Shown one piece after another: positions 5,078 to 62,262 of a stretch of 64,000 nt of DNA (its first letter is position 1; every line of letters begins with the position of its first letter). The notes below the pieces were generated by a model. The model made no database searches. It was given only the letters and a program-made list of their open reading frames with translations, and was not told the origin of the DNA. Position numbers and translations under genes: made by a program. The DNA comes from Mobula hypostoma (lineage: Eukaryota), in NCBI RefSeq assembly GCF_963921235.1, contig NC_086106.1, positions 21,638,001 to 21,702,000 on the forward strand, written 5' to 3'.

Positions 5078-8000
5078 ATATAGAACATAAAACATAGAAC
5101 ATAGAATAGTACAGCGGATTACAGGCCCTTTGGCCCACAATTTTATACGACCCTCAAACCCTGCCTCTCATATAACCCCCTCCATAAATTCCTCCATATA
5201 TCTGTCTAGTAGTGTTTTAAACTTCACTAGTGTTTCTGCCTCCACCACTGACTCAGCAGTACATTCCTCGCACCGACCACTCTCTGATGAAAAAAAAAAC
5301 TTCCTCTACTATCACCCTTGAACTTCCCACACCTTACGTTAAAGCGATGTCCTTGAGCAGTGGCGCCATGGGGAAGAGGCGCTGGCTGTCCACTACATCT
5401 CTTCCTCTTCTTATCTTGTACACCTCTATCGTGCCTCCTGTCATCCTCCTTCTCTCCAAAGGGTAAAGCCCGAGCGCCCTTAATCTATGATCATAATGCA
5501 TACTTTCTAAAGCAGGCAGCATCCTGGTAAAATTGCTCTGTACCCTTTCCAATGGTTCCACATTCTTCCTATAGTGAGGCGTCCAGAATTGGACACAGTA
5601 CTACAGGAGTGGCTTAACCAGAGTTTTATAGAGCTGCATTATTACATCTCGACTCTTAAACTCTGTCCCTCGACTTACGAAAGCTAACACCCCATAAGCT
5701 TTCTTAACTACCCCATCCACCTGTGAGGCAACTTTCAGGGATCTGTGGACATGTACCCCGAGACCCCTCTGCTCCTCCAGACTACCATGTATCCTGCTAT
5801 TTACTGTGTTCTTTACCTTGGAGTTTGTCCTCCTAATCTGTACCAGCTCACCCTTCTCTGGGTTGAACTCCATCTGCCACTTCTCAACCCACTTCTGCAT
5901 CCCATCAATGTCTCTCTCTAATCCTGGACAGTCCTCTACACTATCTACAACACCACCAACCATTGGGTCGTCTGTAATCTTGCCAACCAATCCATCTGCC
6001 CCCACATCCAAGTCGCTAATAAAAATTACGAAAATTAGACGTCCCAGAACAGATCCTTTTGGGTCAGCAGCAGTCACAATCGTCCAATCTGAATGTACTC
6101 CTTCCACTACGACCCACAGCCTTCTAGGGGCAAGCTAATTCTGAATCCACCTGGCCAACTTCCCTGGATCCCATGCCTTCTTACTTTCTGAATAAGCCTA
6201 CCGTGTGGAACTTTCTCAAATCCCTTACTAAAATACATATAGGTCACATCCACTGCACTACCCTCATCTATATGTCTGGTCACCTCCTCAAAGAACTCGA
6301 TAGACTTGCTAGACAGGATCTGCTCTTCACAAATCGATGCTGACTGTCCCTCATCAGACCAGGATTAGTTAAGTGTCCATAGATCCTATCTCTAAGAATC
6401 TTTTCCAACAATTCTCCGAACACAGACGTAAGGCTCTGTGGTCTATAAATACCCGGTCTATTCCCACTACCTTTTATGAACAAAGGGACAACATCCGCCT
6501 GCCTCCAGTCCTCCGGTACCATTCCTGTGGACAACGAGAACAGAAAGATCTTCGCCAGAGGTTCAGCAATCTCTCCCCTTGCCACGTGGAGAAGCCTGGG
6601 GAATATTCGGTCAGGCCCCGGGGACTTATCTGTCCTAATGTATTTTAACAAATCCAACAGCTCTTCTCCCTTAATATCAGCATGCTCCAGGACATCAACC
6701 TCACACATATCGTCCTCACCATCATCAAGTTCCCTGTCATTGGTGAAAACCGAAGAGAAGTATTCATTGAGGAACTCGCTCACTTCCACAGCCTCCAGAC
6801 ACGTCTTTCCACCTTTATCTCTAATCGGTCCTACCTTCACTACTGTCATACTTTTGTTCCTTACATAATTGAAAATAGCCTTGGGGTTTTCCTTTAACCC
6901 AGTCACCAAGGCCTCCTGATGCCCCCTTCTTGTTCTTCTCATCCCCTTCTTAAGCTCCTCTCTTGCTTACCTATATTCCTCAATAGACCCATCTGAGCCT
7001 TGCCTCCTAAACCTCATGTATGCTGCCCTCTTCCACCTGACTAGATTTTCCACCTCACTTGTCACCCATGGTTCCGTCACCCATGGTTCCTTCACCCTAC
7101 CATTCTTTATCTTCCTCACCGGGAAATATGTATCCGTATCATCCTGCAAGAGATCTCTAAGCATTGACCACATGTCCATAGTACACTTCCCTGCAAAAAA
7201 ACATTATCCCAGTTCACACCCGCAAGTTCCAGCCTTATACCCTCATAATTTGCCCTTCCCCATTTTTTTTCCTGTCCTATCTGATTCTATCCTTTTACAT
7301 TATAATGCTAAACGCCCGGGAGCGGTGGTCACTGTCCTCCAGATGCTCGCCCACTGAGAGATCTGTGACCTGACCCGGTTCATTACCTCGCACTAGATCT
7401 CGGCCTGTCCACATAATGTGACAGGTATCCGTCCTGGACAAACTTAACAAACTCTGCCCCATCGAAACCCTTGGAAATAATCGGGTGTCAATCAACATTA
7501 GGGAAATTAAAGTCACCCATGATAACAGCCCTGTTATTTTTGCATCTTTACAAAATCTGCCTCCCATCTGCTCCTCTGTGTCTCTGCTGCTACCAGGGAG
7601 CCGATAGAATACCCCCAATAGAGTAACTGCTCCTTTCCTGTTCCTGACTTCCACACATACTGACTCAAAAGAGGATCCTGCTACATTATCTACCCTTTTT
7701 GTAGCTGTATTAGTATCCATGATCAGTAATACCACACCTCCTCCTTCCCCCTCCCCACGCACATCCCTTTGAAAGTACCGAAATCCAGGAATATTCAGAA
7801 TCCATTCCCGTCCTGTTACCTGCCAAGTCTCTGTAATGGCCACTACATCATAATTGCATGTATTTATCCAAGATTTCAGTTCAATACCTTTGTTCCTGAG
7901 GCCTCCTGCATTGATACACACACTTCAGCACTTCTACATTACTACCTTTACACCGTTTATTCTGCTTCTCCTTCCTCAAAGCCTCTCTATATCTTAGATA

Positions 8001-10640: not shown

Positions 10641-12389
10641 GATTGTCGGGTAGTGTGGTACATAGGGCAGGAAGAGAGTGTTTCACGTTGTATTTATATT
10701 TAAATAAGTAAATAAATAACATTCACGGTTGGGAAATTCGTAAGTTTCCAAGATAGTTACGTTCTATCAATGCCGTTATTCAAAAGCAATGATGCGGCAT
10801 GAAATAACACTGGCACTGCAAATATCCCGACACCAGCCCGGACTTAACTGTGCAGGAAACTACCTGACCTCGTCAAGGAAGTCGAAAGAAATTTGAGATC
10901 GTTTAAATACTGAAATTAATGAATCGGGAATAAAACAAGTATCCAAACTCATATTGAGAAAACTTCAGTTGAGTAACACAGCATTGAACGTCTGCGCGTT
11001 CGTCCAGTGTATCTGGGACCTGCCTTCTTGATTTCCTTTTAATGAGATGAAATTGCGGTACATTTACCCTGGTCTGATTCAAACCAAACTGCCTCATGTG
11101 CGGTGAACAATCTCAAATAGCCCCATAAGGACTGGATACATGAAAGAGCTCTGCACAAATTTTGATCGTTTTAAAAAATCCAATTCGCCTTCATACCTGC
11201 GGCCTCTTATCCGAAGCAGTTTATGTATGTGCTATTCAACATTTTCAGCATCTGCAGAATGTCTTCTATCCAGGTTTGGTGTTTGGATAACAACAACATT
11301 TTATGATGAAACTTTAGGTAAAATAACCGATGTCAATTAGTGATAATAATATGATAGAAGTATAGCAGTCAATTAAAGGTAACTAGAAATATTTTCCTAA
11401 CGTGAATTACATTCAATGCGGACACAACAGTAGGGAAGCAAGACAATCCTCGATTTGGGTCTGCGAAATGAGCTACATTTGCTGAGGAACCTTAAGATAA
11501 CGAAACTATTCGTCGGCAGTGATGAAGATATCAGAACAAACACCCAGCAATTTGAGAGGGACAACCTGGTATTGATGCATCGCTATCAGTAAATCTAAGA
11601 ACAAATGCATGAGTGAGCAGTATGCCAGGTTTGAGGATAAGGAGATGACGGTAGGGCAGCAAGGTTTAAGTAAGCAACAAGTAGCAGAGAAAATGGAGAT
11701 TCAGCGGCCTTCAACACGATGCTGCAGAGGAGCATACCATCAAGAGGGAAGCCCGGGTATTACAAAAAAAGGTGCTAGAATTCATGGAGATTGATTAGTT
11801 TTGTGTAGAAATTCTGACTTTGGTGGTTTGTTGATGTATACATTTAATAGGTATTCGCAACTGTTCAATGGCTTCGACGTATTGGAGGATAGGGAGGGCG
11901 TGAATGCTGCGACGGCTCTTAACCCAGGATGTGCAATTCTGTAAGTTTTTGCTGCTTAAATCATTGAGCTCCGGAAGCAGTATGTACTATGTGGGGTCCT
12001 CAGCAGCCGAGAATTTCAACCTCCTGGTGTTTTCCGTGAAAGTCACCAGGCATGGGACCCATCGGACATTGGAGTAATGGATTCAGAATTCTCCTGCTCT
12101 CGGGGGGTATGGTGCTGTATTCGTTGGAAGTTATTATGCCCGGATTTCAGGCATTAGAGATGTTCCTTGGCAACTGTTTCGAGAACCTCACTCTTTGCGA
12201 TGATTTTTTTTTTTTGTTTTGTGATTTGTGTAATGATGTGGATGTGAAAGTAGAGAAAGTGCATAAATGTTGGTGGTATTGTGTACTGAGTAGAAAAGTT
12301 GTGACATGTTGCGACGGAACGTAGAGAGTATGTAGGGTTCGGTGGAGAAATGAAAGATTACTTTTAAAACGAAAAAGAAAGATTAAAAT

Positions 12390-12690
12390 TGCGAACGTTG
12401 GAAAATAGAACTTAAAGACAGAATACAACGTTACCTGGAGGATTCTTAGCCGTGCAGATGTAGAGATGGGTCTTGGCATCTGCAGCAGTAGATTTATCAT
12501 CGCTGACACTCAAGTTTATTTAAAACATTATCTAGTATGCTGTTCTTGATTGGACTGGATATTGTTTTTAAACGCCGCCAGAAGGTACCTCTGCAAAGAT
12601 CCGATGAGACAACACTAAGAGAATTGTGTTAATTTCTGATCGTCTCATTATAGAGACGATGTGAAAGGTTTCGTGAGGGAGCTCAGAAAA
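12390..12690 (-). pseudogene. Decayed I-set/C2 Ig domain B, cassette 1
   Basis: Across frameshifts reads CLIGS...FWRR...DAKTHLYICTAKNPPGNVVF; C-W ~13 codons and W-C ~41 codons; no RSS follows. Confidence 0.5.
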
Positions 12691-12771
12691 TGTGTTGTGA
12701 GGCCTCATGGATCAGAAGCTGTCTTAAAGGGAAGTTTTGGGCAAAACAGATCTTTTAGCTTTAGATCAACA

Positions 12772-12985
12772 ATAGTTCACAGTCAACTCAATAGAAGTGC
12801 GTAAGATTATGAAAGGCAAAGAAAGTACACCCCCCCCTCCCGGGGCGGTAATGGCAAAGACCAGAATTCCTCCGTTTATGGTGAATTTGCCGTTGATACC
12901 AGAAATAGTTTTTTTTCTTCAAAGAAAAATGATGGATGAATGGAAATCCATGCTGGTGATAGTAAAAGATTCAGGAGAATTTCTA
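12772..12985 (-). pseudogene. Decayed I-set/C2 Ig domain A, cassette 1
   Basis: ESFTITSMDFHSSIIFL*R...NGKFTINGGILVF...GVY.(C)FAFHNLT..TSIELTVN across frameshifts. Confidence 0.4.
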
Positions 12986-13044
12986 TTAACATGCTACTAT
13001 ATATTTACAATGTAGAAAACAATTTGAAGTTTATTGTCTTGGTC

Positions 13045-13310
13045 ATTGCGGCTGGTGGCGCAGTGACATCAGCGCCGGACTCTGCAGCGAAGGTTTCCGA
13101 GTTCGAATACAGTCGAGTCGCCCCGGGCACGCTTTCCATCTGTGCTGTGTTCAGAGTTGAGCTCGCAACTTGGCCTCGGAAAAATAAAAAAAGTAAAACA
13201 AAACTGCGCTGTAAGAAGGACATGGGGGACCACTCACAGAATCTTCCCTCCTGACGACCACTTGAAAAAGTGGTCGCCGAGGCTTTGGCAGAGTACGGCG
13301 CACACAACGA
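13045..13310 (+). mobile_element. tRNA-derived SINE
   Basis: A-box TGGCGCAGTGA, B-box GAGTTCGAATAC and an A-rich tract; absent from the homologous position in cassette 2 (~37815). Confidence 0.65.
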
Positions 13311-14779
13311 AATGTGGGAATATTCGGATAGATAGTTCAGTCCCTCTAAATTAGATGGAACCGCAACGTCTGACTATGAGTCCGCCGTGGATTGTCCCGT
13401 TTGATATTTTTTTGTTTTATGTTCTGTGAGATGTCCAGCGGTAGATGATCCGTCGTTTTATAATTCCCTATCTCCAACGGATTATTAATCGTTTTGTCCT
13501 TTTTTGTCCAGTTAAGGACATTTGCTTTGCAATAAGAGCTCTGAAATTATTATACACAGGACTTAGAGGAACTCTTTGCTGGCTTGTCTAAATATGCGAT
13601 TATTCATTAGCTACTGATTTCCAAAAGGAAAAAAAAAAAGCACGAGAATTTATACAATGGCTCAGGGGAAGTTCAGGAACGAGTTTCCTCAGTTGCTCAA
13701 ATATCCTGTCAACCTATTTGGGAAATTAATGAAACAACTAAATTAGATTTGAAAATGTCTCAGTAGCATCTTATTATAGAATCTTCCCATGCATTTTATG
13801 CTAAATTGCATACTTTGAAATGTGGAAGATTTGAGTTCTGCAGTCATTAATCACGCTCTATTCCATATTAATATAACCTCAACATAATTTCAAGATACGA
13901 TTCCTATGTTCCCCGTAATACTTGCATAATAATTTTCTGAAAAATGTGTGACATTGCCTTGAAATTGCTCAAATAATCACTCTGAACAGATGATTCAAAA
14001 CAGCGATTTCCATGGATACGTGATCTCGTAGAGAAAGAAAATGCACGACACATTGGTTCTTTAAAATTTCGATAATTTGTTTAAAAAGAAACGTTTCGAT
14101 TTGTCGTAAACGAATGGTCCTTAATAAGTTGACGTTACAAATGGTGCGATGTTCGTGTCTATTTATTGTTACTTTTTTGCATCCGTTATACGGGGTTGTT
14201 CGATTGTGTGTTCGTGGAGCTCCCTGACTTTAGTCGCCTCCCTTGTCTGTATGTGACTGAATGCGTTGTTTTCGTTTTCACATGCAGGGTTCGTTGACAA
14301 TGTCACCAAACAGTGTTTATTGCCGTCTGTAATTATTCTGGCAACTCACTGCAGTGGAGAAATAGTTGGCAGACGGTGCAGGAGAAAAATGAAGTTACTG
14401 CATCTAAGTCCTGGCGAATGTAAAACTTTACAGGATTTATTAAGTAGAAGTTCGAACATTTGGGAAATAATCTTACAGAGCCTAACACCCAGACAGATAT
14501 CGGATCTACCTGTTCTATTGTGTAAACTTCTATTTTTTTTTCTTTCACCTATGTAAGGGAAAGACGAAAAGGAAAAAAAAAATGAACAATATCTTGACTT
14601 AGAAACACTGAGGCACTCTGTAGAAATAAGTTGCTCATCGATTTAGCACGTTAAGAGCCATGAGAACGGAATGATTGTCCATGTTTGGAATGAAGACCTG
14701 TGTGGCAAGTACAGTATTACACGTCGATAAATTTTATACACATCGGTGTAAAACTTCCTAACCATTCAGTTATGCATAC

Positions 14780-14950
14780 CCACAATGCTGTAGGAACTCA
14801 GCAGGCCGGGCAGAATCTATGGAAAAGAGTAAAGAGGTGATGTTTAGGGCAGAGACAATTTATCGGGATATTCAAAAAAGCTATCTGCCTTGCCGACGTA
14901 CTCCAGCATTTTGGATCTGTGGCTTTGGTTTTCAGCATCCGCAGATTTTC
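14780..14950 (-). mobile_element. Penelope-like LTR remnant
   Basis: Degenerate copy of the ...ctgcctggcctgctgagttc...agcatt... terminal motif found at 26.9, 38.4 and 52.2 kb. Confidence 0.5.
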
Positions 14951-15099
14951 TGTTTCCCTATTCTCTGTGCCCAGTCATCTTCCGTTTTACTTACAGATCA
15001 GTCAGTTTTCATATCTGTTTTTCTTGTTTACACATGGGTATCAGGCTCACTCGTAACTGGGCGTCACCGCTAAATAATTGAGTCTATAGTTTCTGCATG

Positions 15100-15298
15100 A
15101 TATAGAATTACTTTGGCAATCTTCCAAGATTAAGTCACTTAGCACAGGACTTCCCTTTGAATTTATCGATACTTGACAGGGCTATATCCAGACCTACGAT
15201 CAGCATTTCTTCTTCTGCCCACAAATCTCCTGCTGATAACACGATAAGCTGTTCTGCATATGTGAATGAACCCTTGCTGCTCCTCCAACACAGCACGG
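15100..15298 (-). pseudogene. Possible relic of a leaderless 'supporting' TCR V downstream of J
   Basis: Acceptor TCTCAATAG 204 nt after the J donor; fragments VL.LEEQQG / SCYQQ / IDKFKG across frameshifts; no YYC or RSS found. Confidence 0.25.
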
Positions 15299-15502
15299 CT
15301 ATTGAGATGCGATGCTTTTACAATAATTGTACCTTTCCAAAGACGAGGTCCAGGACGGCTATCAAAACGCGTTATTCTTTATCATGCAGAACTTTACAGC
15401 TTCTATCTCTGAAATATCAATTAAATTTGATATCTTTTTAAAAAATGCCCTTGCAAACTTTGAGGAAACAGCTTTATGAAGTTGGCTTGTTCCGATACTT
15501 AC

Positions 15503-15557
15503 TGACTGTGACAGTGACCGTGGAAACGGTTCCATCTACATAGCTAGTGTAGTAATT
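15503..15557 (-). other. J segment, cassette 1 (NYYTSYVDGTVSTVTVTV)
   Basis: Preceded by 23-RSS (heptamer CGCAGTG 15558-15564, 23-nt spacer, nonamer AATTCTTGT 15588-15596); ends phase 1 at a GTAAGT donor (15497-15502). Confidence 0.8.
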
Positions 15558-15902
15558 CACTGCGATTTAACTCTCAGTCTCACTGGTACAAGAATTATCT
15601 CCACCTCAATGTAATCTGTAGCCGTCATTGGACAGTGTACAACTATTCCAGACTATAAAAACATAAGAAACAACAGTCAGCGTTCCTCAAAGCCCTGTGA
15701 AGTTAACTGTGAAAAAGAAATCTCTGTAAAGTGGCCACTTCATACTTTCTGAATGTCGGTTTTTTAAAGGGCTGTAAGTGTCCAAGAAAAAAAAATCCCG
15801 AAAGAGGCAATGTACAATGGAATTCACCAGGTCATAGTGGTAAAGTAATCCAACATGTGTTTCTCTTTCCCGATTCGAGAATAGAGAATATCGGGGCTGA
15901 GA

Positions 15903-15968
15903 GTTTTGTTCGATTATCCTCCGCTGCGTGTCCTAACATCCACAGTGTTTCATGTCAGGTTCAAATCG
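15903..15968 (-). other. D segment, cassette 1 (GATGTTAGGA, 15931-15940) with flanking 12-type RSSs
   Basis: Perfect 5' heptamer CACTGTG (15941-15947); 3' heptamer CACGCAG, 12 nt, GAACAAAAC; 5' nonamer weak. Confidence 0.7.
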
Positions 15969-16285
15969 CATAACAGGATTGGTTCGGAGATAAATGCATC
16001 CCAACTGCTATTCCAGCATCCATGCCATTGGAGTAAGATCCCATCTGAAGTAAGGAGAATGGGAGGAGGGTAAATCAGTTTTTAGTTGCTCTTCGCTACC
16101 CAATGTTTGGGAAAGCTGGGTTTATAAATGCAAATTCAGAAGAGAAAAAGAAGCTACAGCATGAACACTGAACTTCCAGTCTCATTGAAAGCTATTCTGT
16201 ATAGAACACAGGCGAAGTGTCTGATCGAATTACAGACAGATTAACTACTCTCCTTAAACAGTAGATGGTATATTTTAACAGCGAG

Positions 16286-16323
16286 TATTTGTGTACGGCG
16301 GGAATCCCTTTTCCAGTTCTGTG
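16286..16323 (-). other. V recombination signal (22-nt spacer), cassette 1
   Basis: CACAGAA, 22 nt, ACACAAATA directly after ...YFCNVEYKY. Confidence 0.75.
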
Positions 16324-16797
16324 TATATTTATATTCAACGTTACAGAAATAGGTGGCGATGTCTGAAACTAAAAGATTCATAGATTTCAGGGTAATTGTC
16401 ATTTCTGATTTATTTTCCGTTACTACATCTTCCTCCTGTGTAGATACGCTGGATTTCCTTTCCGGGCTGTTTCTATTTGAAAAAAAAACTGTCTGGTTAC
16501 AAAAATATCCCATTGTCTAGCATGGAACTTGCATGCGATGGTGAGAGACTGATATTCACTTTTCGTTACCGCTGTCGGGTTCTGGGTCACGGATTGGCAG
16601 AAGAAATCTGGAAAATAAGAATATGCATTTGCAAAGCGGCATTAGACGTGAATCACGCACGACAGATAATATTATGAGCTCATGAGATTCCGAATCTACG
16701 TTTTCAGTTTTATATTTAACTCTCATACTGCGTAAGGTTGTGAATGGTACTCACGGCGAAAGAAGACGCACAGCGTGACATTTAAGAGAAAGTTCAT
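16324..16797 (-). pseudogene. VNAR-like (NAR-TCR-type) V pseudogene with split leader, cassette 1
   Basis: Leader exon 16755-16797 (MNFLLNVTLCVFFR, GTGAGT donor), 147-nt intron, V exon from 16607: FFCQSVTQNPTAVTKSEYQSLTIACKFH...QFF...QRIYTGGR..VTENKSEMTITLKSMNLLVSDIATYFC; two frameshifts; CDR2 region short as in VNAR. Confidence 0.85.
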
Positions 16798-16822
16798 CTT
16801 TTCCTCTCCGGGTGTCGGATGG

Positions 16823-16828
16823 TTTATA
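16823..16828 (-). promoter_or_regulatory. TATA-like box of the NAR-type V
   Basis: TATAAA 26 nt upstream of the leader ATG; conserved at ~40036 in cassette 2. Confidence 0.5.
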
Positions 16829-17299
16829 TTACAGAGAGCTAGAATGCTGTTGTAGGTTATTCCTTTAACTGGACAGTAACACGTCGGCCGTTTGCTGTTG
16901 CAGAGTTATGCAATTGCCTCTCTGCTTCCGAATTACCGTTTGTGCGAAGAAAACGTCAGGTTTAATGAGCAATCGTTGTGGTTCTGTTTTCACAACTTCT
17001 TTGCAAGCTCCTCCTGCCTGTTTTAACGCCAACAGGGGTAATGCTTCGTCCTTTGAATAAATACAAAATGACGGAGGAGATGGGAAAAGGAAATGACATA
17101 ATTTACCAGTGCCAGTGTGAAAAGAAAACTCGTCAGGATAACTGTGAGTGTCACTAGGTTTGTAAAGATATTAGCAGATGTCTCTGGGAGAGTGAGTCAG
17201 AATGATTGAGAACGGCGAACACGGTGTCAGAAATGGAACAAGTAAATTGTTGGACGCTGTGGAAGTTGGAGTCAAAGTCGCTGATATTGACGAGCTATT

Positions 17300-33900: not shown

Positions 33901-36900
33901 TCTAGACTGCAGTATATAAATAATCTCTTGTGGTCATTTGATAATAAATTAGCGTTTGACTTTAATCTCCTCTGCCTGAAATACGAGAAATGAATACGAC
34001 CTGCAAGTTCACAAGGTGATGAGAGGATGTTTCACGGGCCTTGTTCAGACTTCCTTGTTATGACCGCTGGCATGACCAATAGTTTGCTAACTGACACAGA
34101 AGAGACGGTTTCGAATAACCGCATTGAACATTTATCTCAGACATAGAGTAAAGCATTCTACCAGACATCTAAATCACCCTAATTTGAACACATTGCGACA
34201 CTACATATTTTGTTATACTTCAAATTACCAGGTGCTTCATAAAGTCTCCGGATGTGCACAACTAAACAGCTAAGCGTTCAAAAGATACTTAGGTCACTGT
34301 GTGCATGGGTCCTCCTATATCCGAAGTATCCTTTTCAAATGGCACTTTACAACTATTCGTGACCTCAGTGTGAAGTTGAGCCCATGATGAGAAAGTAAAG
34401 CAAGCGAGTCCCTTGCACGTGCTATTCTTATATCCCCGAGTCGCCAGGAACCGAACAGTAGAGCCATAACGAGCTGGGAAACCAAAGGGAATTATGCGCT
34501 GCAAACATATAAAAGATAAACCAATCAACAACCGGCACAGTAGAAACGGCATTAAACTGGCAATTAAACTAACCTTTCAAGTTGCAATTCCTGAATAAAT
34601 TGGAAAGGTCCACAGAAGGGATTGTCTCATACGAGTTGCATTTGCATTTCGTTCGATGCTGGTACATAGCGCACTTGATTGTCGCTATCCTGAGCATGAT
34701 AATGAGACTGTGGGAATGGATGAACATTGCGTTGAAATCCATATCAAAGCATAAAACTTAGATACAGTCTTCAAAAATCCATGTTGAAGCCAATTACCTC
34801 TTCAGCCTTGAACGCATTGTTAGAGAAGGTGGATGAAGATGATCAAACATAGCCATTGGAACTCTTCCAGATAAAGATTTCCCAACCCAGTTTCCACAGA
34901 CCCCTTGATCATTACTGTTGCTCCATGGCATAAAACGGGAGTATATGCCCTTGTTCTAGATAGCTGCATGTTTACAAATGGAAGGTTATAGGCAAAATTG
35001 CGCATTATGAATGCTGGAAAGGTTTAGAGCATTAAGCGTCTTGAATTAGGTCCTGTAGGCATTAGTGTCATCTGACCATCTTCTGAAATCTACATTTCCA
35101 ATTTTCTAGCTTATATTTACTCGTTGCACCTCAGGAGTATTTTGTAAATTTGCCTTGATGCTATTCAAATAACTAATCACCTGAGTTTCAAAAGAGTCAT
35201 TTCTGCAGATTTTGAACACTAAGATACACAAACCAGAACAAAAAAAAAATCGCAATAGAAATAAATTTACATTATAAATGGCGATCTGATATCTCGATAT
35301 ATGAAAAGGACAGCATTTTCGAAGCAGATTCAATATTAGTTTTGTTCACATCCTTTGCCTCTATGTTTAATTGGTGGTGAGCGGACGATTTGAGGCGAAA
35401 TGTCGGTGAAAATAAAATCATATTATGTTCATTTTTTGTACTTATCGTTCTACGAATCCAACCACAGCCAGATCCTCAAACCATTGGATTCATAACTTAA
35501 ACCGTTCTAGGTCTGCACTCGAAAATAACACAGTACAGACTTTCAGGGTACACTTCAAGCGAGCTAACGGGTTTTCTCCGTGTACTCCCTCTCGTGGCTT
35601 GCGGTTTCGAAATGTACCAGGTTAGATAAAGGATCTTCAATGTGTAGTAAATTAATCTACATGAATCAGTGATCATAATATGATAGAAGTATAGCAGTCA
35701 ATTAAATGTAACTGGAAGGATATTCCTTATGTTCATTGCAGTAAATGTGGTCGGGATGGTTGACGCAAAAGACAATCCTGGATTTGGTTTTGTGAAATGA
35801 GATAGATTTGATGAAATCTGATGTATAAGATTGCTTGTGCTGTTTTTTCCTTAGATTATGAAGACACGCAGTCCTCTTTTTATTGTCATTTAATAATGCA
35901 TGTATTAAGAAATGATACTATATTTCCTCCGCTGTGATATCACAAAACACAGGACAGACCAAGTCTGAGAAAAACAAACAAAACGACATAATTATAACAT
36001 ATAGTTACAACAGTGCAACAATTCCATACTTGATGAAGAACAGCCATGAGCACAGTAAAAAAAGTTCAGTCTCATAGACTTTAAAGGGAGAAAAGCAGTC
36101 TTATGAGAATGATCCTAGAGATGAAAGACTTATCGTATGTGGAGCATTTTATGGCTTGCTGAAGTAGAACACTGATGCTAATCTCATCGTAATGTAACGC
36201 ATATAATACTTCCAGTAGCGGCAAAGTGGAGCCTCAGAGAGAGAAAACTTCAGAAAAGAAATGCATTCCGTACATTAAAGAGGAAACTTAATGGGAGATT
36301 GCGACTGTGTTGCACTCCTTGCCACACACTATTGTGGAGCACTCTTACAATACACTCCAAGCAGCAGTAAATATCTTCTTAAATCGTAAGTATGTCGTAC
36401 TTTAGAGGGAGCCGCCAGGAGAATATAGTTTAGATTTTCTAATAAATAGAGAGCAAAGTGGCAGAACCAATGTCGAGAGGTCACGTAGCTCAATACTTCT
36501 CCTGTGGTCTTATAGTCATCTCCTGTATATAACTCTGAAACATGCTTTAACGTACTATAGTATCTCTATTAGTTCGATGAACAGCCTCACACGCACATAA
36601 TTAATAATTAGATATACTCAATAAATACTGAGGGCTGGAGGTCTGAGCAGGTGATGTTTGTGTAGAAATTCTGAACTTTGGAGGGTTGTTTATGTTCCAA
36701 TTTAATACTTATTTGCGGCTGAGTTCAATGGCTTCCACGCATTGCAGGAAAGATCGGGCGTGAATGTTTGGAGAGCTCTTAACCCCTAATATGCCGTTCT
36801 GTATGATTTTGCTGCTTGATCATCCATTCTCGGATGCGGTCTCTAATAGCAGCGGTGATCAGCAGCACATAAATGCAAAAACACGCTGGAAGCCTTGTGG

Positions 36901-37169
36901 CGTTCATCGCGCAGGTGACCAGGCATGGACTCCACGGGACATTGGAAGAGACCAGGCCTGGTGCGCTATAAGATGGACGTTATTATGCCCGGATTTAAGG
37001 ATTTAGAAATGCCCCTTAAGTAAATGTTTCGGGATCCTCACTCTTTTTGACGTTAACAATTACTTTGCCATTTGTGTAATGTCTTGGATGTGAAAGTAAA
37101 GAAGTATAGACAGTTTGTAGGGGTGGGTGAAAAATGAAACACTGTTATTAAAACGAAAAAAAAATGGCA

Positions 37170-37440
37170 ATAACGAACATCAGCAGATAGCACTTGATAG
37201 CTGAATGCAACGTCATTAGGAGGATTCTCGGCGGTGCAGATGTACGGAGGAGTCTCGGCATCCACATCAGTACATTCATCATTGCTACAACTCAAATGTG
37301 TATAAGAAATAAGATGGTGTGCCGTCCTTCATTTGACGGGATATTGATTTTAACAGACACGAGAAGATCCTTTTGCTCAGCAAAGATCCGTTTATGCAAC
37401 ACTCTGATAAGTATGCTAATTTCTGTCCGTCTCATCACTC
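37170..37440 (-). pseudogene. Decayed I-set/C2 Ig domain B, cassette 2
   Basis: ECCINGS...DVDAETPPYICTAENPPNDVAFSYQVL (ORF 37053-37295). Confidence 0.5.
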
Positions 37441-37548
37441 GGTTCAGTGAGGGAGCTCAGAATAGTTACCATGAAGCCTCGTAGATTAGACAATGCCTTA
37501 AGTGGATTTTTTGAGCAAAATAGAGCTTTTTGATTTAGACTGGCGCTG

Positions 37549-37775
37549 GTCTACAGTCAACTTAATAGAATTGTGTAAGATTATGAAATGCATAGACAGT
37601 ATATTTCCCCCCAGGGCGTTAGGGTCAAACACAATTATTCTTCCTTTTATGGTGACTGGCCAGAAATATTGCGTAGCTATCAGAAGTGTTGTTGTTGTTG
37701 TTGTTGTTGTTTCCACACTGAATTGTGGATGCCTGGAGCTCCATACTGGAAATGGTAGAAGATTCAGGAGGATAT
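37549..37775 (-). pseudogene. Decayed I-set/C2 Ig domain A, cassette 2
   Basis: ESSTISSMELQAS..VWK...GKYTVYAFHNL..NSIKLTVD across frameshifts; interrupted by (AAC)n. Confidence 0.4.
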
Positions 37776-38099
37776 TTTAAAATATACTATTTTAATGTCG
37801 ACAACAAATTGAGGTTTATTGTCTTTGTATGAGGGAATGTTTGGCGAGATAGTTTAGTTGCTCTAAATTTATTAACAGAGCAACATGTGACAAAGTATCC
37901 GCAGTGTGTTGTCCTCTTTGATTTTGTTTGTTTTATGTTCCATGATATGGCGAAAGGCAGATAATCCATCGTTTTATTGTTTACTACCTCTAACAGCTTT
38001 ATCACAATTGTGTCCTTTTGTCATGTTATGGACATTTCATTTCCCGTAGGAACTCCTAATACTCTTGTGCAGGACTTGGGGAACGCTAATGCCCCGCCC

Positions 38100-38475
38100 G
38101 CCCCCACCGTACTCAATCCATTATTTGTTTTTATACACACACTCTTTCTCTCACTCTCATTTTTCTCCCTCTGTCTCTCTGTCTATACACATTGCCCATC
38201 CTCTGGGTTCTCCCCCACCTTGTCTTTCTCCCCGGACCTCCTGTTCCGTGATCCCTTTGCCAATCACCTGTCCAGCTCTTGGCTCCATCCCTCCCCCTCC
38301 TGACTTCTCCTATCATTTTGGATCTCCCCTCTCCCTCCCACTTTCAAATCTCTTGCTAACTCTTCCTTCAGTTAGACCTGACGAAGGATCTCGGCCTGAA
38401 CCGTCGACTGTACCTCTTTCTAGAGATGCTACCTGGCCTGCTGCGTTCACCAGCAACTTTGATGTGTGTTGCTAC
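38100..38475 (+). mobile_element. Penelope-like LTR insertion
   Basis: Pyrimidine-rich LTR ending in CTGACGA-AGGATCTCGGCCT-GAACCGTCGAC...ctttgatgtgtgttgc (mutated hammerhead). Confidence 0.8.
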
Positions 38476-38742
38476 CAAAACAAATAGCCGCTCTGTATAC
38501 GTGAATGAACCCTTGCGGCTCCCCTCGCTCTGCATGGGCAGAGAAATGCACTGCTTTTACTTTAATTGTACGTTTCCTCAGACGACGTCATGCCCTGCAA
38601 TCTAACCACTTTATTCTTGATCAAGCTCAGCCTCATAGCTCTTATTTCCGAACTCGCAATCGAAATTATTATCTTCAGTAAAACTGCCCTTGCAAGGACC
38701 TTGAAGAAACAGCTTTGTAAATTTGGTCGTTCAGTTACTTAC

Positions 38743-38790
38743 CGACTGTGACAGTGACCATCTTTATAGTAAATATAGTAGTAACATCTT
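38743..38790 (-). pseudogene. J segment, cassette 2 (..MVTVTV), degenerate
   Basis: GTAAGT donor at 38737-38742; 23-nt spacer homologous to J1, but heptamer destroyed and internal deletion. Confidence 0.7.
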
Positions 38791-39124
38791 AATCCGACAT
38801 CGGTCTCACTGGTAAAAGTATTGTCCTCAACTCATTCTAATCAGCAGCCGTTATTGGAGAGTGTACAAGTATTCAGGACTTTAAATATCATTAACAACAG
38901 CATTCAGTGTACCACAAATCTCTACTAAGTAACTTGTGGAAAAGAAAAATCCGTAAAATTGCCTCATTATTCTTTCCGGACGTCGGTTCCCTAAATTGCA
39001 GCAAATCATAAAGTAAAATCCCTGAAATGAGCAATGTAGAATGGAATTCACCAGATCAGAGCGGGAAAGTAATCTGACATATGATATCCCCAGTATAAAA
39101 TAGATAATTTTTTGGTGTCAAAAG

Positions 39125-39192
39125 TTGTTCTTTGATTAGCCTTCACTCTGTGGCATCAAGAATCCACAGTGATCAGGTTCAGATCGCAGAAC
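39125..39192 (-). other. D segment, cassette 2 (GATTCTTGATGC, 39153-39164) with 12-type RSSs
   Basis: CACTGTG at 39165-39171; 3' CACAGAG, 12 nt, AAAGAACAA. Confidence 0.7.
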
Positions 39193-39494
39193 AGGAATGG
39201 TCTGAACAATACGGCTTACCTACTGCTGTCCCAGCTGCCATGCTAGTGGAGCAGCGTCCCAACAGAAGGATGCGATTGGGAAGGGGGGAATCTTTACCGG
39301 TTGTTGTACACTGCACAATTTCTGGGAAAGGTCGTTTCAACCATGCAAAGTCAGAAGAAAAAAGAACTAGCGTATGCGCACGTCCAATCCCATTATAAAC
39401 TATACTGCATGGAACGCAGGCGAAGTGCCTCGTTGAAATTACCAGTAGATTTCACTCTGCTCCTCAAGTTATTGACGGTAGACAGTTTAGCGAG

Positions 39495-39532
39495 TATTTG
39501 AGTACGCTGGGAACCCCTTTCCATATTATGTG
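39495..39532 (-). other. V recombination signal (22-nt spacer), cassette 2
   Basis: CACATAA, 22 nt, ACTCAAATA. Confidence 0.65.
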
Positions 39533-40010
39533 AATATTCATATTTATATTCAACTTTACATAAATAGGTGTCGTTGTCCTTAACTAGAAGTTTCATAATT
39601 TTGAGCGTAATTGTCATTTCTGCTTTATTTTATTTTCTCATAAATCCTTGTCATGTGTGCATACGCTCCCTTCACTTTCAGCGTTGTGCCTGTTTCAAGA
39701 ATTGTCACGTTACAAATTTAATTCTATCAATTAGCATGGAACCTGCAGGTGATTCTGAGTGACTGACATTCATATTTCGTAATTGCTGTCGGGCTCTGGG
39801 TCACGTACTGTGTGAAGAAGTCTGGAGATTAAGAATATGGATAAGCGAAATGGCATTAGATGTCAAATGTACAACATTTCTAAAACTATGTCTTCATGAA
39901 ATTCCGAATCCGCCTGTCAGATTTATATTGAACTCACACATTGCGGAGAATTGTGAACTGTAATCACTACAAGAGTAGAGGCACAGCGGGACGATCAAGA
40001 GAAATTGCAT
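39533..40010 (-). pseudogene. VNAR-like (NAR-TCR-type) V pseudogene with split leader, cassette 2
   Basis: Leader 39968-40010 (MQFLLIVPLCLYSC), 146-nt intron, V: FFTQYVTQSPTAITKYECQSLRITCRFH...QFLKQ...NKAEMTITLKIMKLLVKDNDTYLC; one frameshift and several stops; F41 to C104 spans 48 residues, as in VNAR. Confidence 0.85.
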
Positions 40011-41539
40011 CGTTTCGTCTCCAAGTTTCAGATGGTTTATATTACGGAGAGTAATACTGCTGTGGTACGTTGTTCCTCAGAACTGGGCAGAGGCACTTAC
40101 GCTGGTTGCTTTTCTAGATGTATTGTACTTCGGCACTGTTTCCAAATTACCTTTCGTGCGAGAAAGTGTCAGGTTAATGAGCAATAGTTATGGTTCTGCT
40201 TCCACTCAATTTCTTGGCAACTGATGTGAAAGCTGCTCCCTAACTGTTTTAACGGCAACAGGAGTAACACCTAGTCTTTTGAATGAATACATAAAGACAG
40301 GGATCTGCCAAGAGGAAATGACATAATTTACAAGTGCCAGGGTGAAAAGAAGTCTTCTCAAGGTAATGTGAGTGTCACTAGGTTTACAAAAATATCAGCA
40401 GACCGTCTCCAGATGTTTCCAGGGATAGAGTCAAAAAGATAGAGAAAGGAGTCAGATATGGAACAAGCGATTTGATCGACCCAATGGAAGTTGGAGGCAA
40501 AGTTGATGAAGTTGATGAAATCCGCAAATGTACATGAAGCAACACCAGTGTAGTCGTCCATGTCTCACTGAAAGAGTTGGGGAACGTCGGGGCGTTATCT
40601 GTGTAGACTTGGGTCATAGACTGTTCTATATAGGCGAAGCATATATAGACATGACAGTGGAAGGGGCGGGTGGGGAGTTATGCGGATTCCTATGGCTACA
40701 CTGTGGGTTTGGAGACAATGGGAGGAGCCGAAAGAAAAAAAAAATGGTTGGTTTGTGAACCAGCTGCTCAGTATTGTTCAGCTTGATGCTTTTAATTTGC
40801 GAGATCATGTTTGCGATCCGCTCAGATTACAGTTTCGCTAATGTCGCAGAAATGCTTTCTCTATACACACAACAGTATTACTTACTTTATCAACAAAGTC
40901 AGCTGCTAGAAAATTCATTCATCTATGCCTGCTATGACAAGCATTTTAGCCGATGTACTTCAGTACTGGTCCGAGTACACTGCCGATCCTCCTTAATTAC
41001 AAATATTGCTGATGGACTATGAACCACAGTATATAGCAGTCTTCACTTATTTAGCGTGTTTTGACAGCACTGATTACAATTGCGTGCACGGATGAATTTG
41101 ATAATATATTTTAAGATATATTCAAAGAAGTCATACAGCATAGTATCAAAATGAAGAGAGAAAAAAAACAGTTTGATTTTTTTTTCTCTAAGATCGTCAT
41201 CCCACACTCAGAGTAATACTATCACTTTCACTAGCACTCACAGGAGCACATCATCAGACAAAAACCGTTGCGTTGTGGCATCGTCGGGCATACTTTTCTG
41301 TTATGAAATGTAATACTTACATGATGTCTTCATTTTTTTTTTACTATAGACACGTAAAGGTAATTTCATGAGCTCGTTATACAGTGTTCCTTTCCAACTC
41401 ATCACCTCTACAAGGTGTCTACCGGGATCTAATGCACAAGTTTTATCAATGATTTTATAACATTATTTTTTTGAAGAATTGTATAAAGGTGATGGAACAA
41501 TTGTTAATTGCATATTATGTGTGTCCGTGTGTAGGTATA

Positions 41540-43384: not shown

Positions 43385-45058
43385 AAGAATATAGAACATA
43401 GAACATAGAATAGTACAGCACAGTACAGGCCCTTCGGCCCACAATGTTGTGCCGGCCCTCAAACCTGGCTTCCCATATTATCCCCCAACTCAGATTCCTC
43501 CATATACCTGTGTAGTAGTCTCTTAAACTTCATTAGTGTATCTGCCTCCACCACTGACTCAGGCCGTGCATTCCACGCACAAACCACTCTCTGAGTAAAA
43601 AACCTTCCTCTAATATCCCCTTTGAACTTTCCACCCCTTACCTTAAAGCCATGTCCTCTTGTATTGAGCAGTGGTGCCCTGGGGAAAGGCACCGGCTATC
43701 CACTCTGTCTATTCCTCTTATTATCTTGTACACCTCTATCATGTCTCCTTTCATCCTCCTTCTCTCCAAAGATTAAAGCCCTAGCTCCCCTAATCTCTGA
43801 CCATAATGCATACTTTCTAAACCAGGCAGCACCCTGGTAAATCTCCTCTGTACCCTTTCCAATGCTTCCACATCCTTCCTATTGTGAGATGACCAGAACT
43901 TGACACAGTACTCCAAGTGTGGCCGAACTAGAGTTCTATAACGCTGCATCATTACATCGCGACGCTTAAACTCTATCCCTCGACTTATGAAAGCTAACAG
44001 CCCATAAGCTTTCTTAACTACCCTATCCACCTGTGAGGCAACTTTCAGGAATCTGTGGACGTGTACCCCGAGATGCCTCTGCTCCTCCATACTACAAAGT
44101 ATCCTGCCATTTACTTTGTACTCTGCCTTGGAGTTTGTCCTTCCAAAGTGTAGCACCTCACACTTCTCTGGGTTGAACTCCATCTGCCACGTCTCAGCCC
44201 ACTTCTGCATCCTATCAATGTCTCTCTGCAATCACTGACAATCCTCTACACTATCTGCAACGCCACCAACCTTTGTGTCGTCTGCAAACTTGCCAACCCA
44301 CCTTTCTACCCCCACAACCAGGTCGTTAATATAAATCTCGAAAAGTAGATGACCCAGGACAGATCCTTGTGGGAAACCATTAGTCACAATCTTCCAATCT
44401 GAATGTACTCCCTCCACCACCACCCTCTGCCTTCTGCAGGCAAGCCAATTCTGAATCCATCTGGCCAAACTTCCATGGATCCCATGCCTTCTAACTTTCT
44501 GAATAAGTCTACAGTGTGGAACCTTGTCAAATGCCTTAATGAAATCCATATAGACCACATCCACTGCACTACCCTCATCTATATGCCTGGTCACCTCCTC
44601 AAAGAACTCTAACAGGCTTGTTAAACACGATCTGCCCTTCACAAAGCCATGCTGACTGTCCCTGATCAGACCATGATTCTGTAAATGCCTATAGATCCTA
44701 TCACTAAGAATCTTTTCCAACAGCTTTCCCACCACAGACGTAAGGCTCACTAGTCTATAATTATCCGGACTATCCCTACTACCTTTTTAGAACAAGGGAA
44801 CAACATTCGCCTCCCTCCAATCCTCCGGTACCATTCCCGTGGACAACGAGGACATAAAGATACTAGCCAGAGGCTCAGCAATCTCTTCTCTCGCCTCGTG
44901 GAACAGTCTGGGAAATATTCCGTCAGGCCCCGGGGACTTATCTGCCCTAATGATTTTAACAACTCGAACACCTCCTCTCCATTAATATGAACTTGCTCCA
45001 GAACATCAACCTCACTCATATTGTCCTCACCATCATCAAGTTCCCTCTCATTGGTGGC
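43385..45058 (-). mobile_element. Young CR1 LINE, 5'-truncated, RT nearly intact
   Basis: ORFs 44232-44750 and 43773-44231 are in frame and separated by a single TGA; (atagaac)n tail at ~43390. Confidence 0.93.
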
Positions 45059-51332: not shown

Positions 51333-51680
51333 ATGGACCTTAAAATTACAGTTTTTATTTTTGGAATCTTTACCAGGTATGTGTTATGCCGTCTCCGTAA
51401 CACAGGAGGAAAGCTCGATTAAAACAACAGAAGGGGGAAATGTCACTTTAACCTGTTCCGACGGCAATAAAGGTTATTACTTATTCTGGTATCGCCAGTT
51501 CACAAGCAGACATCCTGAGTTTGCAGTTCGGAGATATACTGATGGCAGTTCTGATTATAAATCGAAATTCGCTGTCGACTGGTTTTCCGACGTCATGCTT
51601 CAATCGGTGCTGAGCTATCAATTGACCATCTCAAAGCTGCGAATGTCTGATACGGCGGTGTATTACTGTGTAGTGAGACT
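51333..51680 (+). CDS. TCR alpha/delta-type V gene segment (V domain open; leader has a 1-nt frameshift)
   Basis: VSVTQEESSIKTTEGGNVTLTC...YLFWYRQ...YQLTISKLRMSDTAVYYCVVR, with C23, W41 and C104 intact. Confidence 0.9.
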
Positions 51681-61914: not shown

Positions 61915-62262
61915 ATGTACCGCACAGTAATAGGTTGCTCTATCATATTGCCGCAGCGCCTGGATGGTCAAACGATACTCCATTAGAGACAACTCGACTA
62001 CATCAGCATACCGGCCTTTGGCAAAATCAGCCTTCAGGTCGTCACGATTAAATATGTTTCGACGGGCCACAATCTCGACCGTTCCACCTGGGTTTTGGCG
62101 ATACCAATATAAATAAAAAGCATCATTGCTGTAGGTGCACGTTAGCGTAATACCTTGGCCCTCAGTCCCCATGACTGCAGAATCTTTCTGAGTCACGTAA
62201 TCAGCGTCATTTTGGTCTGGAAAACAGGCAAAAAAGTAAAATAATATTTGCAACTTTAACAT
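61915..62262 (-). CDS. TCR alpha/delta-type V gene segment, apparently intact, leader and V in one ORF
   Basis: 116 codons: MLKLQILFYFFACFPDQNDA-DYVTQ...LTCTYS...LYWYRQ...YRLTIQALRQYDRATYYCAVH, followed by the RSS. Confidence 0.93.

What the first reader, a model, noticed from the sequence alone, without database searches (positions are those of the whole stretch)
15503..16828. NAR-TCR-like L-V-D-J cassette with IgH-type 23/12-12/23 RSS inside a TCR V array
Seen: split leader, V lacking the CDR2 region, RSS with 22-nt spacer, single D with 12/12 RSS, J with 23-RSS and donor; V-D and D-J gaps of ~370-380 bp. Knowledge: TCR-delta J normally carries a 12-RSS, whereas shark NAR-TCR uses Ig-like V-D-J mini-clusters within the TCR alpha/delta locus. 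Inference: a decayed NAR-TCR unit, likely from a ray, where such loci are less well documented.
Basis: partly seen in the sequence, partly recalled or inferred. Interest (0 to 1): 0.7.

Follow-up and report, generated by a model that had tools for sequence, protein, structure and literature searches.

The report
Dead ray NAR-TCR V-D-J cassette
This is a broken copy, with no RNA found, of the known shark-and-ray NAR-TCR gene unit (an antibody-like V, D and J set inside a T-cell receptor locus) that has also lost its partner V segment, so it is an ordinary pseudogene and not a new kind of receptor.

Summary
On the minus strand at 15503-16797 lie a split leader, a short NAR-type V, a 22-nt-spacer RSS, one D with 12/12 RSS, and a J with a 23-nt RSS and splice donor.

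- **Identity:** the V matches NAR-TCR V models of sharks and batoids. It sits inside the NAR clade of a tree, next to sawfish NAR-TCR V. It has the family's FR2 without the canonical Trp.
- **RSS geometry:** the "IgH-type" 23/12-12/23 layout is the normal layout. Intact cassettes fetched from Pristis and Amblyraja have the same geometry and positionally homologous D and J flanks.
- **Decay:** there is a 1-nt frameshift in a T9 run, confirmed in the source sample's contigs. The a-b loop Cys is now Tyr and the J motif DGTG is now DGTV. Three of the four heptamers are degraded; the 5' D heptamer is perfect. No RNA was found.
- **Missing partner:** no leaderless supporting delta V follows J.
- **Second copy:** a more decayed paralogue (about 70% identity) lies at 38732-40010 and also lacks a supporting V.

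The scan has already reported several intact NAR-TCR cassettes elsewhere in this ray genome. The system has been known since 2006. This is a further, dead member, of low interest.

The parts
16755..16797 (-). Copy 1 leader exon part 1 (ATG at 16797-16795; ends CGCC before the GTGAGT donor, phase 1)
   Evidence: The exon end and donor (cgcc|gtgagtacc) are the same as in the Pristis and Amblyraja cassettes.
16608..16754 (-). Copy 1 leader intron (GT...TTTTCCAG)
16324..16607 (-). Copy 1 NAR-TCR-type V exon. It has a 1-nt frameshift in the T9 run 16480-16488, Tyr (TAT 16552-16554) where the family has the a-b loop Cys, and FR2 reading FVTRQ without the canonical Trp.
   Evidence: The NAR-TCR V HMM hits the two halves at E 6e-11 and 1e-10. 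phmmer hits a horn-shark NAR-TCR model at E 5e-9. Local DNA alignment to the Pristis NAR V scores 177.5 against 21.7 +/- 3.1 for shuffles. The T9 run is confirmed by a source-sample contig with 0 differences.
16286..16323 (-). Copy 1 V RSS: CACAGAA, 22-nt spacer, ACACAAATA
   Evidence: The Amblyraja V RSS also has a 22-nt spacer.
15903..15968 (-). Copy 1 single D (GATGTTAGGA, 15931-15940) with 12-nt-spacer RSS on both sides
   Evidence: It aligns with the D and RSS of Pristis and Amblyraja.
15558..15596 (-). Copy 1 J RSS: AATTCTTGT, 23-nt spacer, CGCAGTG
   Evidence: It aligns with the GGTTCTTGT-23-CACTGTG of Pristis and Amblyraja.
15503..15557 (-). Copy 1 J coding (NYYTSYVDGTVSTVTVTV) followed by donor GTAAGT at 15502. 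The family motif DGTGS reads DGTVS here.
38732..40010 (-). Copy 2: a paralogous, more decayed L-V-D-J cassette. It has several stops and frame changes in V, keeps the a-b loop Cys, has V heptamer CACATAA, D GATTCTTGATGC, and a J shortened by 14 nt.
11318..17293 (-). Extent of the duplicated unit holding copy 1. Its partner is 35647-40518, at about 65-76% identity, and coding parts are no better kept than spacers.

Best explanation
The stretch is a germline NAR-TCR V-D-J cassette that has become a pseudogene. In an intact unit the NAR-type V, its one D and its J are joined by RAG. This follows the 12/23 rule, with V-23 joining 12-D-12 joining 23-J. The J then splices onto a leaderless supporting TCR-delta V that rearranges separately, giving a delta chain with two V domains.

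Here that pathway is broken at several points:
- a frameshift in V;
- loss of the Cys thought to bridge the two V domains;
- loss of the second Gly of the J G-x-G bulge;
- three weakened RSS heptamers;
- no supporting V for the J donor to splice to.

The unit had probably already lost its supporting V and part of its V RSS before it was duplicated. That duplication produced this copy and the one at 38.7-40.0 kb. The sequence features are shown. The order of events and the lack of function are inferred.
For: **V identity**
- A NAR-TCR V HMM built from 31 shark and batoid models hits both halves of V at E about 1e-10, and hits copy 2 as well.
- The second half of V scores 50.8 bits to a horn-shark NAR-TCR model. 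It scores at most 25 bits to any VH and 18 bits to any VNAR in the PDB.
- In the tree, copies 1 and 2 are sisters (99/95). They sit inside the NAR clade, which is split 100/100 from 18 TCR V, next to Pristis P0060.
- FR2 lacks the canonical Trp, and copy 2 keeps the a-b loop Cys. Both are stated signatures of NAR-TcRV (PMC1845163).

**Architecture**
- Intact Pristis and Amblyraja cassettes have the same leader splice, V-23(22)/12-D-12/23-J geometry and J donor. Their D and J flanks are homologous to those here.

**Decay**
- The Cys codons are 188 nt apart.
- The T9 run is confirmed in the source sample.
- Coding parts are no better conserved than spacers between the two copies.
- Both copies deviate at V heptamer positions 6-7, ending AA.
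- A supporting-V HMM, tblastn and DNA Smith-Waterman find nothing downstream of either J.
- No RNA holder was listed. RNA contigs lie only on repeats, apart from one piece that looks like a paralogue.

**Locus**
- Conventional TCR alpha/delta-type V segments with RSS lie at 51.4 and 62 kb.
- Intact cassettes have been noted elsewhere in this genome.
Against: - Copy 1 has only one frame break in V, and it lies in a homopolymer. An intact T10 allele in the population cannot be excluded.
- All four heptamers keep the critical CAC, so residual recombination is possible.
- No batoid IgNAR V and no VH were in the tree.
- No TCR delta C, D or J lies in the window, so the locus assignment rests on the neighbouring V segments and on earlier unchecked notes.
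- The RNA runs are few and their tissues are unknown.
- The supporting V could lie beyond the region searched, or be the opposite-strand remnant at 10.9 kb.
Confidence: 0.9

Rival explanations
1. It is a decayed IgNAR heavy-chain cluster (V-D-D-D-J followed by constant exons), not NAR-TCR.
For: NAR-TCR V and IgNAR V are close relatives. An intact batoid NAR-TCR V finds VNAR structures as its best single-domain PDB matches, at 57 bits. [quoted passage not shown]
Against: - There is one D, not three.
- FR2 lacks the Trp that VNARs keep.
- The D and J flanks are homologous to NAR-TCR cassettes.
- The V groups with batoid NAR-TCR V and away from the two VNARs.
- No C1-set-like reading frame was found anywhere in the 64-kb window.
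Confidence: 0.03
2. The cassette is still usable. A T10 allele restores the frame, the degraded RSS still recombine, and J splices to a distant supporting V or directly to C delta.
For: There is a single frameshift in a T9 homopolymer. All heptamers keep CAC. The J donor GTAAGT is intact.
Against: - The source-sample contig matches the T9 run exactly.
- The a-b loop Cys and the J G-x-G motif are lost.
- No supporting V lies in cis.
- Conservation between the two copies looks neutral.
- No RNA holder was listed.
Confidence: 0.04
3. The unit would then be a dead V-D-J-C gene of a new kind, not NAR-TCR.
For: A block downstream of J is shared by both copies (12322-13043 with 37107-37828). It holds motif-level resemblances such as YICTAKNPPG, and Cys...Trp...Cys spacings of about 41-46 residues.
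Against: - Pfam finds nothing in any piece at E up to 10.
- PDB phmmer finds only noise.
- The protein atlas finds nothing.
- Part of the neighbouring stretch is high-copy repeat.
- The block is no better conserved than the surrounding non-coding DNA.
Confidence: 0.03

Closest known systems
NAR-TCR (doubly rearranging TCR delta of cartilaginous fish; Criscitiello, Saltis, Flajnik 2006, as summarised in PMC1845163 and PMC12227049)
   Same: Split leader. Short NAR-type V without the FR2 Trp. A single D. V-23/12-D-12/23-J geometry and a J splice donor. Setting among TCR V segments. DNA homology to intact sawfish and skate cassettes.
   Different: The V is frameshifted. The a-b loop Cys is lost in copy 1. 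The J motif and the RSS are degraded. CDR1 is about 6 residues shorter and the C'-D region about 5 longer than in the batoid models compared. The leaderless supporting delta V is absent.
IgNAR V-D1-D2-D3-J clusters (VNAR)
   Same: Related short single-domain V with a Cys-Cys span near 61-63 residues. Cluster-type arrangement with a few hundred bp between segments.
   Different: IgNAR has three D segments, keeps the FR2 Trp and is followed by constant exons. None of these is found here.
IgH-type RSS arrangement (VH-23, 12-D-12, 23-JH)
   Same: The spacer pattern is identical.
   Different: The V is not a VH. The pattern is simply the one every intact NAR-TCR cassette examined here uses.
TCR mu of marsupials and monotremes
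   Same: A three-domain TCR chain with an antibody-like N-terminal V made by its own rearrangement (PMC3457774).
   Different: It is regarded as convergent. It uses VH-related V in a separate locus and occurs only in mammals.

Membership tests
NAR-TCR cassette | Typical split leader on the NAR-type V | tested here: met
   ATG 16797, donor CGCC|GTGAGT, acceptor at 16608, phase 1. The junction is the same as in Pristis and Amblyraja.
NAR-TCR cassette | Short NAR-type V domain that groups with NAR-TCR V | tested here: met
   Cys-Cys span 63, against 61-65 in NAR-TCR V and 71 in TCR V. HMM E about 1e-10 for each half. Inside the NAR clade at 100/100.
NAR-TCR cassette | Absence of the canonical Trp of the WYRK motif (PMC1845163) | tested here: met
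   FR2 reads IFVTRQ in copy 1 and KFVT*Q in copy 2. Intact batoid models read FFKQ or FFRQ.
NAR-TCR cassette | Cys in the a-b loop (PMC1845163) | tested here: not met
   Copy 1 has Tyr (KSEYQS, TAT 16552-16554). Copy 2 keeps Cys (KYECQS). One base differs, so this reads as decay of copy 1.
NAR-TCR cassette | Own single D and J with V-23/12-D-12/23-J signals and a J splice donor | tested here: met
   The geometry is the same in intact Pristis and Amblyraja cassettes, with aligned D and J flanks.
NAR-TCR cassette | Leaderless supporting TCR delta V with a CDR1 Cys downstream of J, in the same orientation | tested here: not met
   The supporting-V HMM hits only the conventional V at 51.4 and 62 kb and a plus-strand remnant at 10897-11028. 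tblastn and DNA Smith-Waterman over 4.5 kb (copy 1) and 3.2 kb (copy 2) downstream give noise. In Pristis the J-to-supporting-V intron is 1.34 kb.
NAR-TCR cassette | Location in the TCR alpha/delta locus | tested here: inconclusive
   Two conventional TCR alpha/delta-type V with RSS lie in the window, but no D delta, J delta or C delta. Earlier notes place intact cassettes 53 kb away and further off (not checked here).
NAR-TCR cassette | Open reading frame and expression | tested here: not met
   There is a frameshift at the T9 run. No RNA holder was listed.
IgNAR cluster | Three D segments between V and J | tested here: not met
   Only one D with paired RSS lies in the 760-bp V-J interval.
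IgNAR cluster | Constant-region (C1-set) exons after J | tested here: not met
   No C1-set-like frame in the window. Pfam finds nothing downstream of J.

The most novel reading that the evidence does not exclude
The two copies descend from a NAR-type V-D-J cassette that was separated from its supporting delta V and then copied on its own. That would make them a fossil of the V-D-J mobility proposed to have moved the NAR V between the TCR delta and Ig loci. They would also represent a distinct batoid NAR V sublineage, with a short CDR1 and a longer C'-D region. Alternatively, the shared block after J is the remains of different partner exons.
Probability: 0.1. Interest if true: 0.4.

Novelty: new member of a known kind. 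Interest (0 to 1): 0.15.

Why it matters
It matters little on its own. NAR-TCR has been known since 2006, and intact cassettes have already been reported from this genome by the scan.

It does have three modest uses:
- It shows directly, from three batoid genomes, that the 23/12-12/23 signal geometry is the rule for NAR-TCR cassettes.
- It documents that such cassettes can persist and be duplicated without their supporting V. This is relevant to models in which the NAR V-D-J unit moved between loci.
- It helps to annotate pseudogenes in a large, repeat-rich ray TCR locus.

Tried and rejected
- **PDB searches with the two V halves.** They gave only weak, mixed VH, TCR alpha, VL and VNAR hits and could not classify the V.
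- **Word-indexed protein search with a V-only query.** It returned one unnamed protein, so no batoid IgNAR V or VH could be added to the tree. Two shark VNAR segments from PDB alignments were used instead.
- **Papers.** Criscitiello 2006 (PMC1458790) and Ott 2021 (PMC7909615) are not held. The family's defining features were taken from PMC1845163.
- **Block downstream of J (12322-13043 and 37107-37828).** I tested it as a supporting V and as I-set/C2 domains (Pfam, PDB, atlas). Neither reading got any support.
- **Weak supporting-V HMM hits at 34.1 and 35.2 kb.** These are noise on inspection.
- **RNA.** None was listed for the cassette. Laid RNA contigs sit on repeats at 13049-13300 and 14784-14856, plus one 75-nt piece with 8 mismatches that looks like a paralogue.
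- **Tool failure.** The first sequencing-run look-up failed because the machine was busy.
- **Not determined.** The listed indels did not show whether the related species shares the T9 frameshift.

Full report
**What is there**

The feature lies on the minus strand.
- Leader part 1: 16797-16755, ending CGCC before GTGAGT.
- Leader intron: 147 bp, to the acceptor at 16608.
- V exon: 16607-16324.
- V RSS: CACAGAA, 22-nt spacer, ACACAAATA (16323-16286).
- D: a 10-nt segment (15940-15931) flanked by CGATTTGAA-12-CACTGTG and CACGCAG-12-GAACAAAAC.
- J: preceded by AATTCTTGT-23-CGCAGTG (15596-15558), coding 15557-15503, then GTAAGT.

RSS-like sites of this quality are rare in the window. I estimate four in the right places and orientations at about 1e-9 by chance.

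The two conserved Cys codons are 188 nt apart, so the V carries a 1-nt frameshift. It lies in the T9 run 16488-16480.

**What the V is**

- Pfam sees only a sub-threshold V-set match in the second half.
- PDB searches with the halves are ambiguous.
- A search of 1.8 billion representative proteins with the second half found a horn-shark protein at E 5e-9. Its sequence is a NAR-type V, a J and a second V.
- From that protein, a further search returned about 70 germline gene models with the same two-V layout. They come from sharks and from the batoids Pristis, Amblyraja and Rhinoraja, mostly named 'uncharacterized' or misnamed.
- An HMM of their NAR V parts hits both halves of this V at E 6e-11 and 1e-10. 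It also hits a second copy in the window.
- Local DNA alignment of the Pristis NAR V exon to this V scores 177.5, against 21.7 +/- 3.1 for shuffles.
- In maximum-likelihood trees the two window copies are sisters (99/95). They lie inside the NAR clade, which is separated 100/100 from 16 supporting delta V and the two conventional V of the window. Their nearest neighbour is Pristis P0060.
- Two shark VNARs fall elsewhere, within the shark NAR-TCR group.
- The Cys-Cys span is 63 residues, against 61-65 in NAR-TCR V and 71 in TCR V.
- PMC1845163 lists the NAR-TcRV signatures: a leader, a Cys in the a-b loop and no canonical Trp in FR2. Here FR2 reads FVTRQ. Copy 2 has the loop Cys and copy 1 has Tyr, a one-base change.

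**The signal geometry is normal**

I fetched the genomic loci of one Pristis and one Amblyraja model.

| Element | Pristis | Amblyraja |
|---|---|---|
| Leader junction | cgcc\|gtgagtacc | same |
| V RSS | CACAGTG-23-nonamer | CACAGTG-22-ACAAAAACC |
| D | 12/12 RSS | 12/12 RSS |
| J RSS | GGTTCTTGT-23-CACTGTG | J-23 |
| After J | GTAAGT donor, 1.34-kb intron, leaderless supporting V followed by two RSS in a row | GTAAGT donor |

The D and J regions of both window copies align with both species, signals included. So the 'IgH-type' 23/12-12/23 pattern is the family's rule, not an oddity of this copy.

**Evidence of decay**

- The frameshift is real in the source sample. An independently built contig covers 14802-17300 with no difference.
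- The loop Cys is lost.
- The J motif DGTG(S/T)TVTVTA reads DGTVSTVTVTV.
- The V, 3'-D and J heptamers have drifted, though all keep CAC.
- No RNA run of the species holds the cassette. Laid RNA contigs fall only on repeats, apart from one piece that looks like a paralogue.
- A related species carries an orthologous contig about 93% identical.

**Second copy and history**

- Self-comparison shows that 11318-17293 is duplicated at 35647-40518.
- The second cassette (38732-40010) is collinear at about 70% identity. It has several stops, frame changes and a shortened J.
- Coding segments are no better conserved than spacers: 75% in V against 66-75% elsewhere. That fits neutral drift.
- Both V heptamers end in AA, which suggests the signal was already degraded before the duplication.
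- The copies differ about five times more than the two species' orthologues do. The duplication is therefore much older than that species split (inference).

**The missing partner**

- A supporting-V HMM finds only three things: the conventional V at 51388-51678 (+), the one at 61918-62202 (-), and a short remnant at 10897-11028 on the plus strand (E 0.009).
- That remnant resembles supporting V more than the window's own V. It lies outside the duplicated unit and points the opposite way.
- tblastn and DNA alignment find nothing downstream of either J.
- Another note of the scan reads the shared block after J as decayed I-set/C2 domains. Pfam, PDB and atlas searches give no support for that.
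- Adjoining parts of the block are high-copy repeats.
- No C1-set-like frame exists in the window. LINE reverse-transcriptase and endonuclease fragments fill much of the rest.

**Verdict**

This is a real but dead NAR-TCR V-D-J cassette in a ray, one of two old paralogues that lack the supporting V. The kind has been known since 2006, and the scan has already reported intact copies in this genome. Interest is low.

Limits:
- No batoid IgNAR V or VH was in the tree.
- No TCR delta D, J or C lies in the window.
- The RNA data are thin.

Noticed in passing
window 38732-40010 (-): A second, more decayed NAR-TCR-type L-V-D-J cassette, part of a 5-6 kb duplicated unit (35647-40518 paired with 11318-17293). 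It keeps the a-b loop Cys but has several stops and a J shortened by 14 nt.
   Followed up: yes
window about 10740-11028 (+): A decayed V fragment (FR2-FR3, ...KQVSKLILRKLQLSNTALNVCA). It resembles NAR-TCR supporting delta V more than the window's conventional V. It lies on the opposite strand, just outside the duplicated unit. It could be the remnant of another cassette or an inverted partner.
   Followed up: partly
window 15600-15700 (-); L001 7150-7225; L002 7160-7235: About 100 bp just upstream of the J RSS (CTGGAATAATTG...GGCTGCTGATTAG.TTGAGGTGAG) is conserved between both window copies and the sawfish and skate cassettes. It is kept better than the rest of the D-J spacer. Its function is unknown.
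   Followed up: no
window 12322-13043 and 37107-37828 (-): A block downstream of J shared by both copies. It carries Ig-like motifs at the level of single words (YICTAKNPPG) but has no Pfam, PDB or atlas support. Depth in DNA contigs suggests a few further copies in the genome.
   Followed up: partly
window 13049-13300 and 14784-14856: Very high-copy repeats; summed contig depth reaches hundreds of thousands at about 14.8 kb. They also appear in the RNA contigs. They sit in the 1.7 kb that copy 1 has and copy 2 lacks between J and the shared block.
   Followed up: no
window 51388-51678 (+) and 61918-62202 (-): Two apparently intact conventional TCR alpha/delta-type V segments with CACAGTG-22/23-ACAATAACT signals. 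They lie in opposite orientations.
   Followed up: partly
window 2-10 kb, 17.3-20.3 kb, 23.4-29.3 kb, 43.4-45 kb, 54-55.8 kb: Repeated LINE fragments (reverse transcriptase at 44232-44747, endonuclease at 7295-7918), 80-90% alike. One of them bounds the duplicated unit at 17300.
   Followed up: partly
L001 8975-9075 (Pristis pectinata): The supporting V of the intact sawfish cassette is followed by two RSS in a row (CACAGTG-23-ACAAAAACC, then CACACAG-23-ACAAAAACT).
   Followed up: no
tree; proteins P0006, P0069, P0070: Two shark VNARs nest inside the shark NAR-TCR V group. This fits the proposed transfer of the NAR-TCR V to an Ig cluster, but rests on only two VNARs. Public names of NAR-TCR gene models are misleading (DSCAM-like, kappa light chain-like, lachesin-like).
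   Followed up: no
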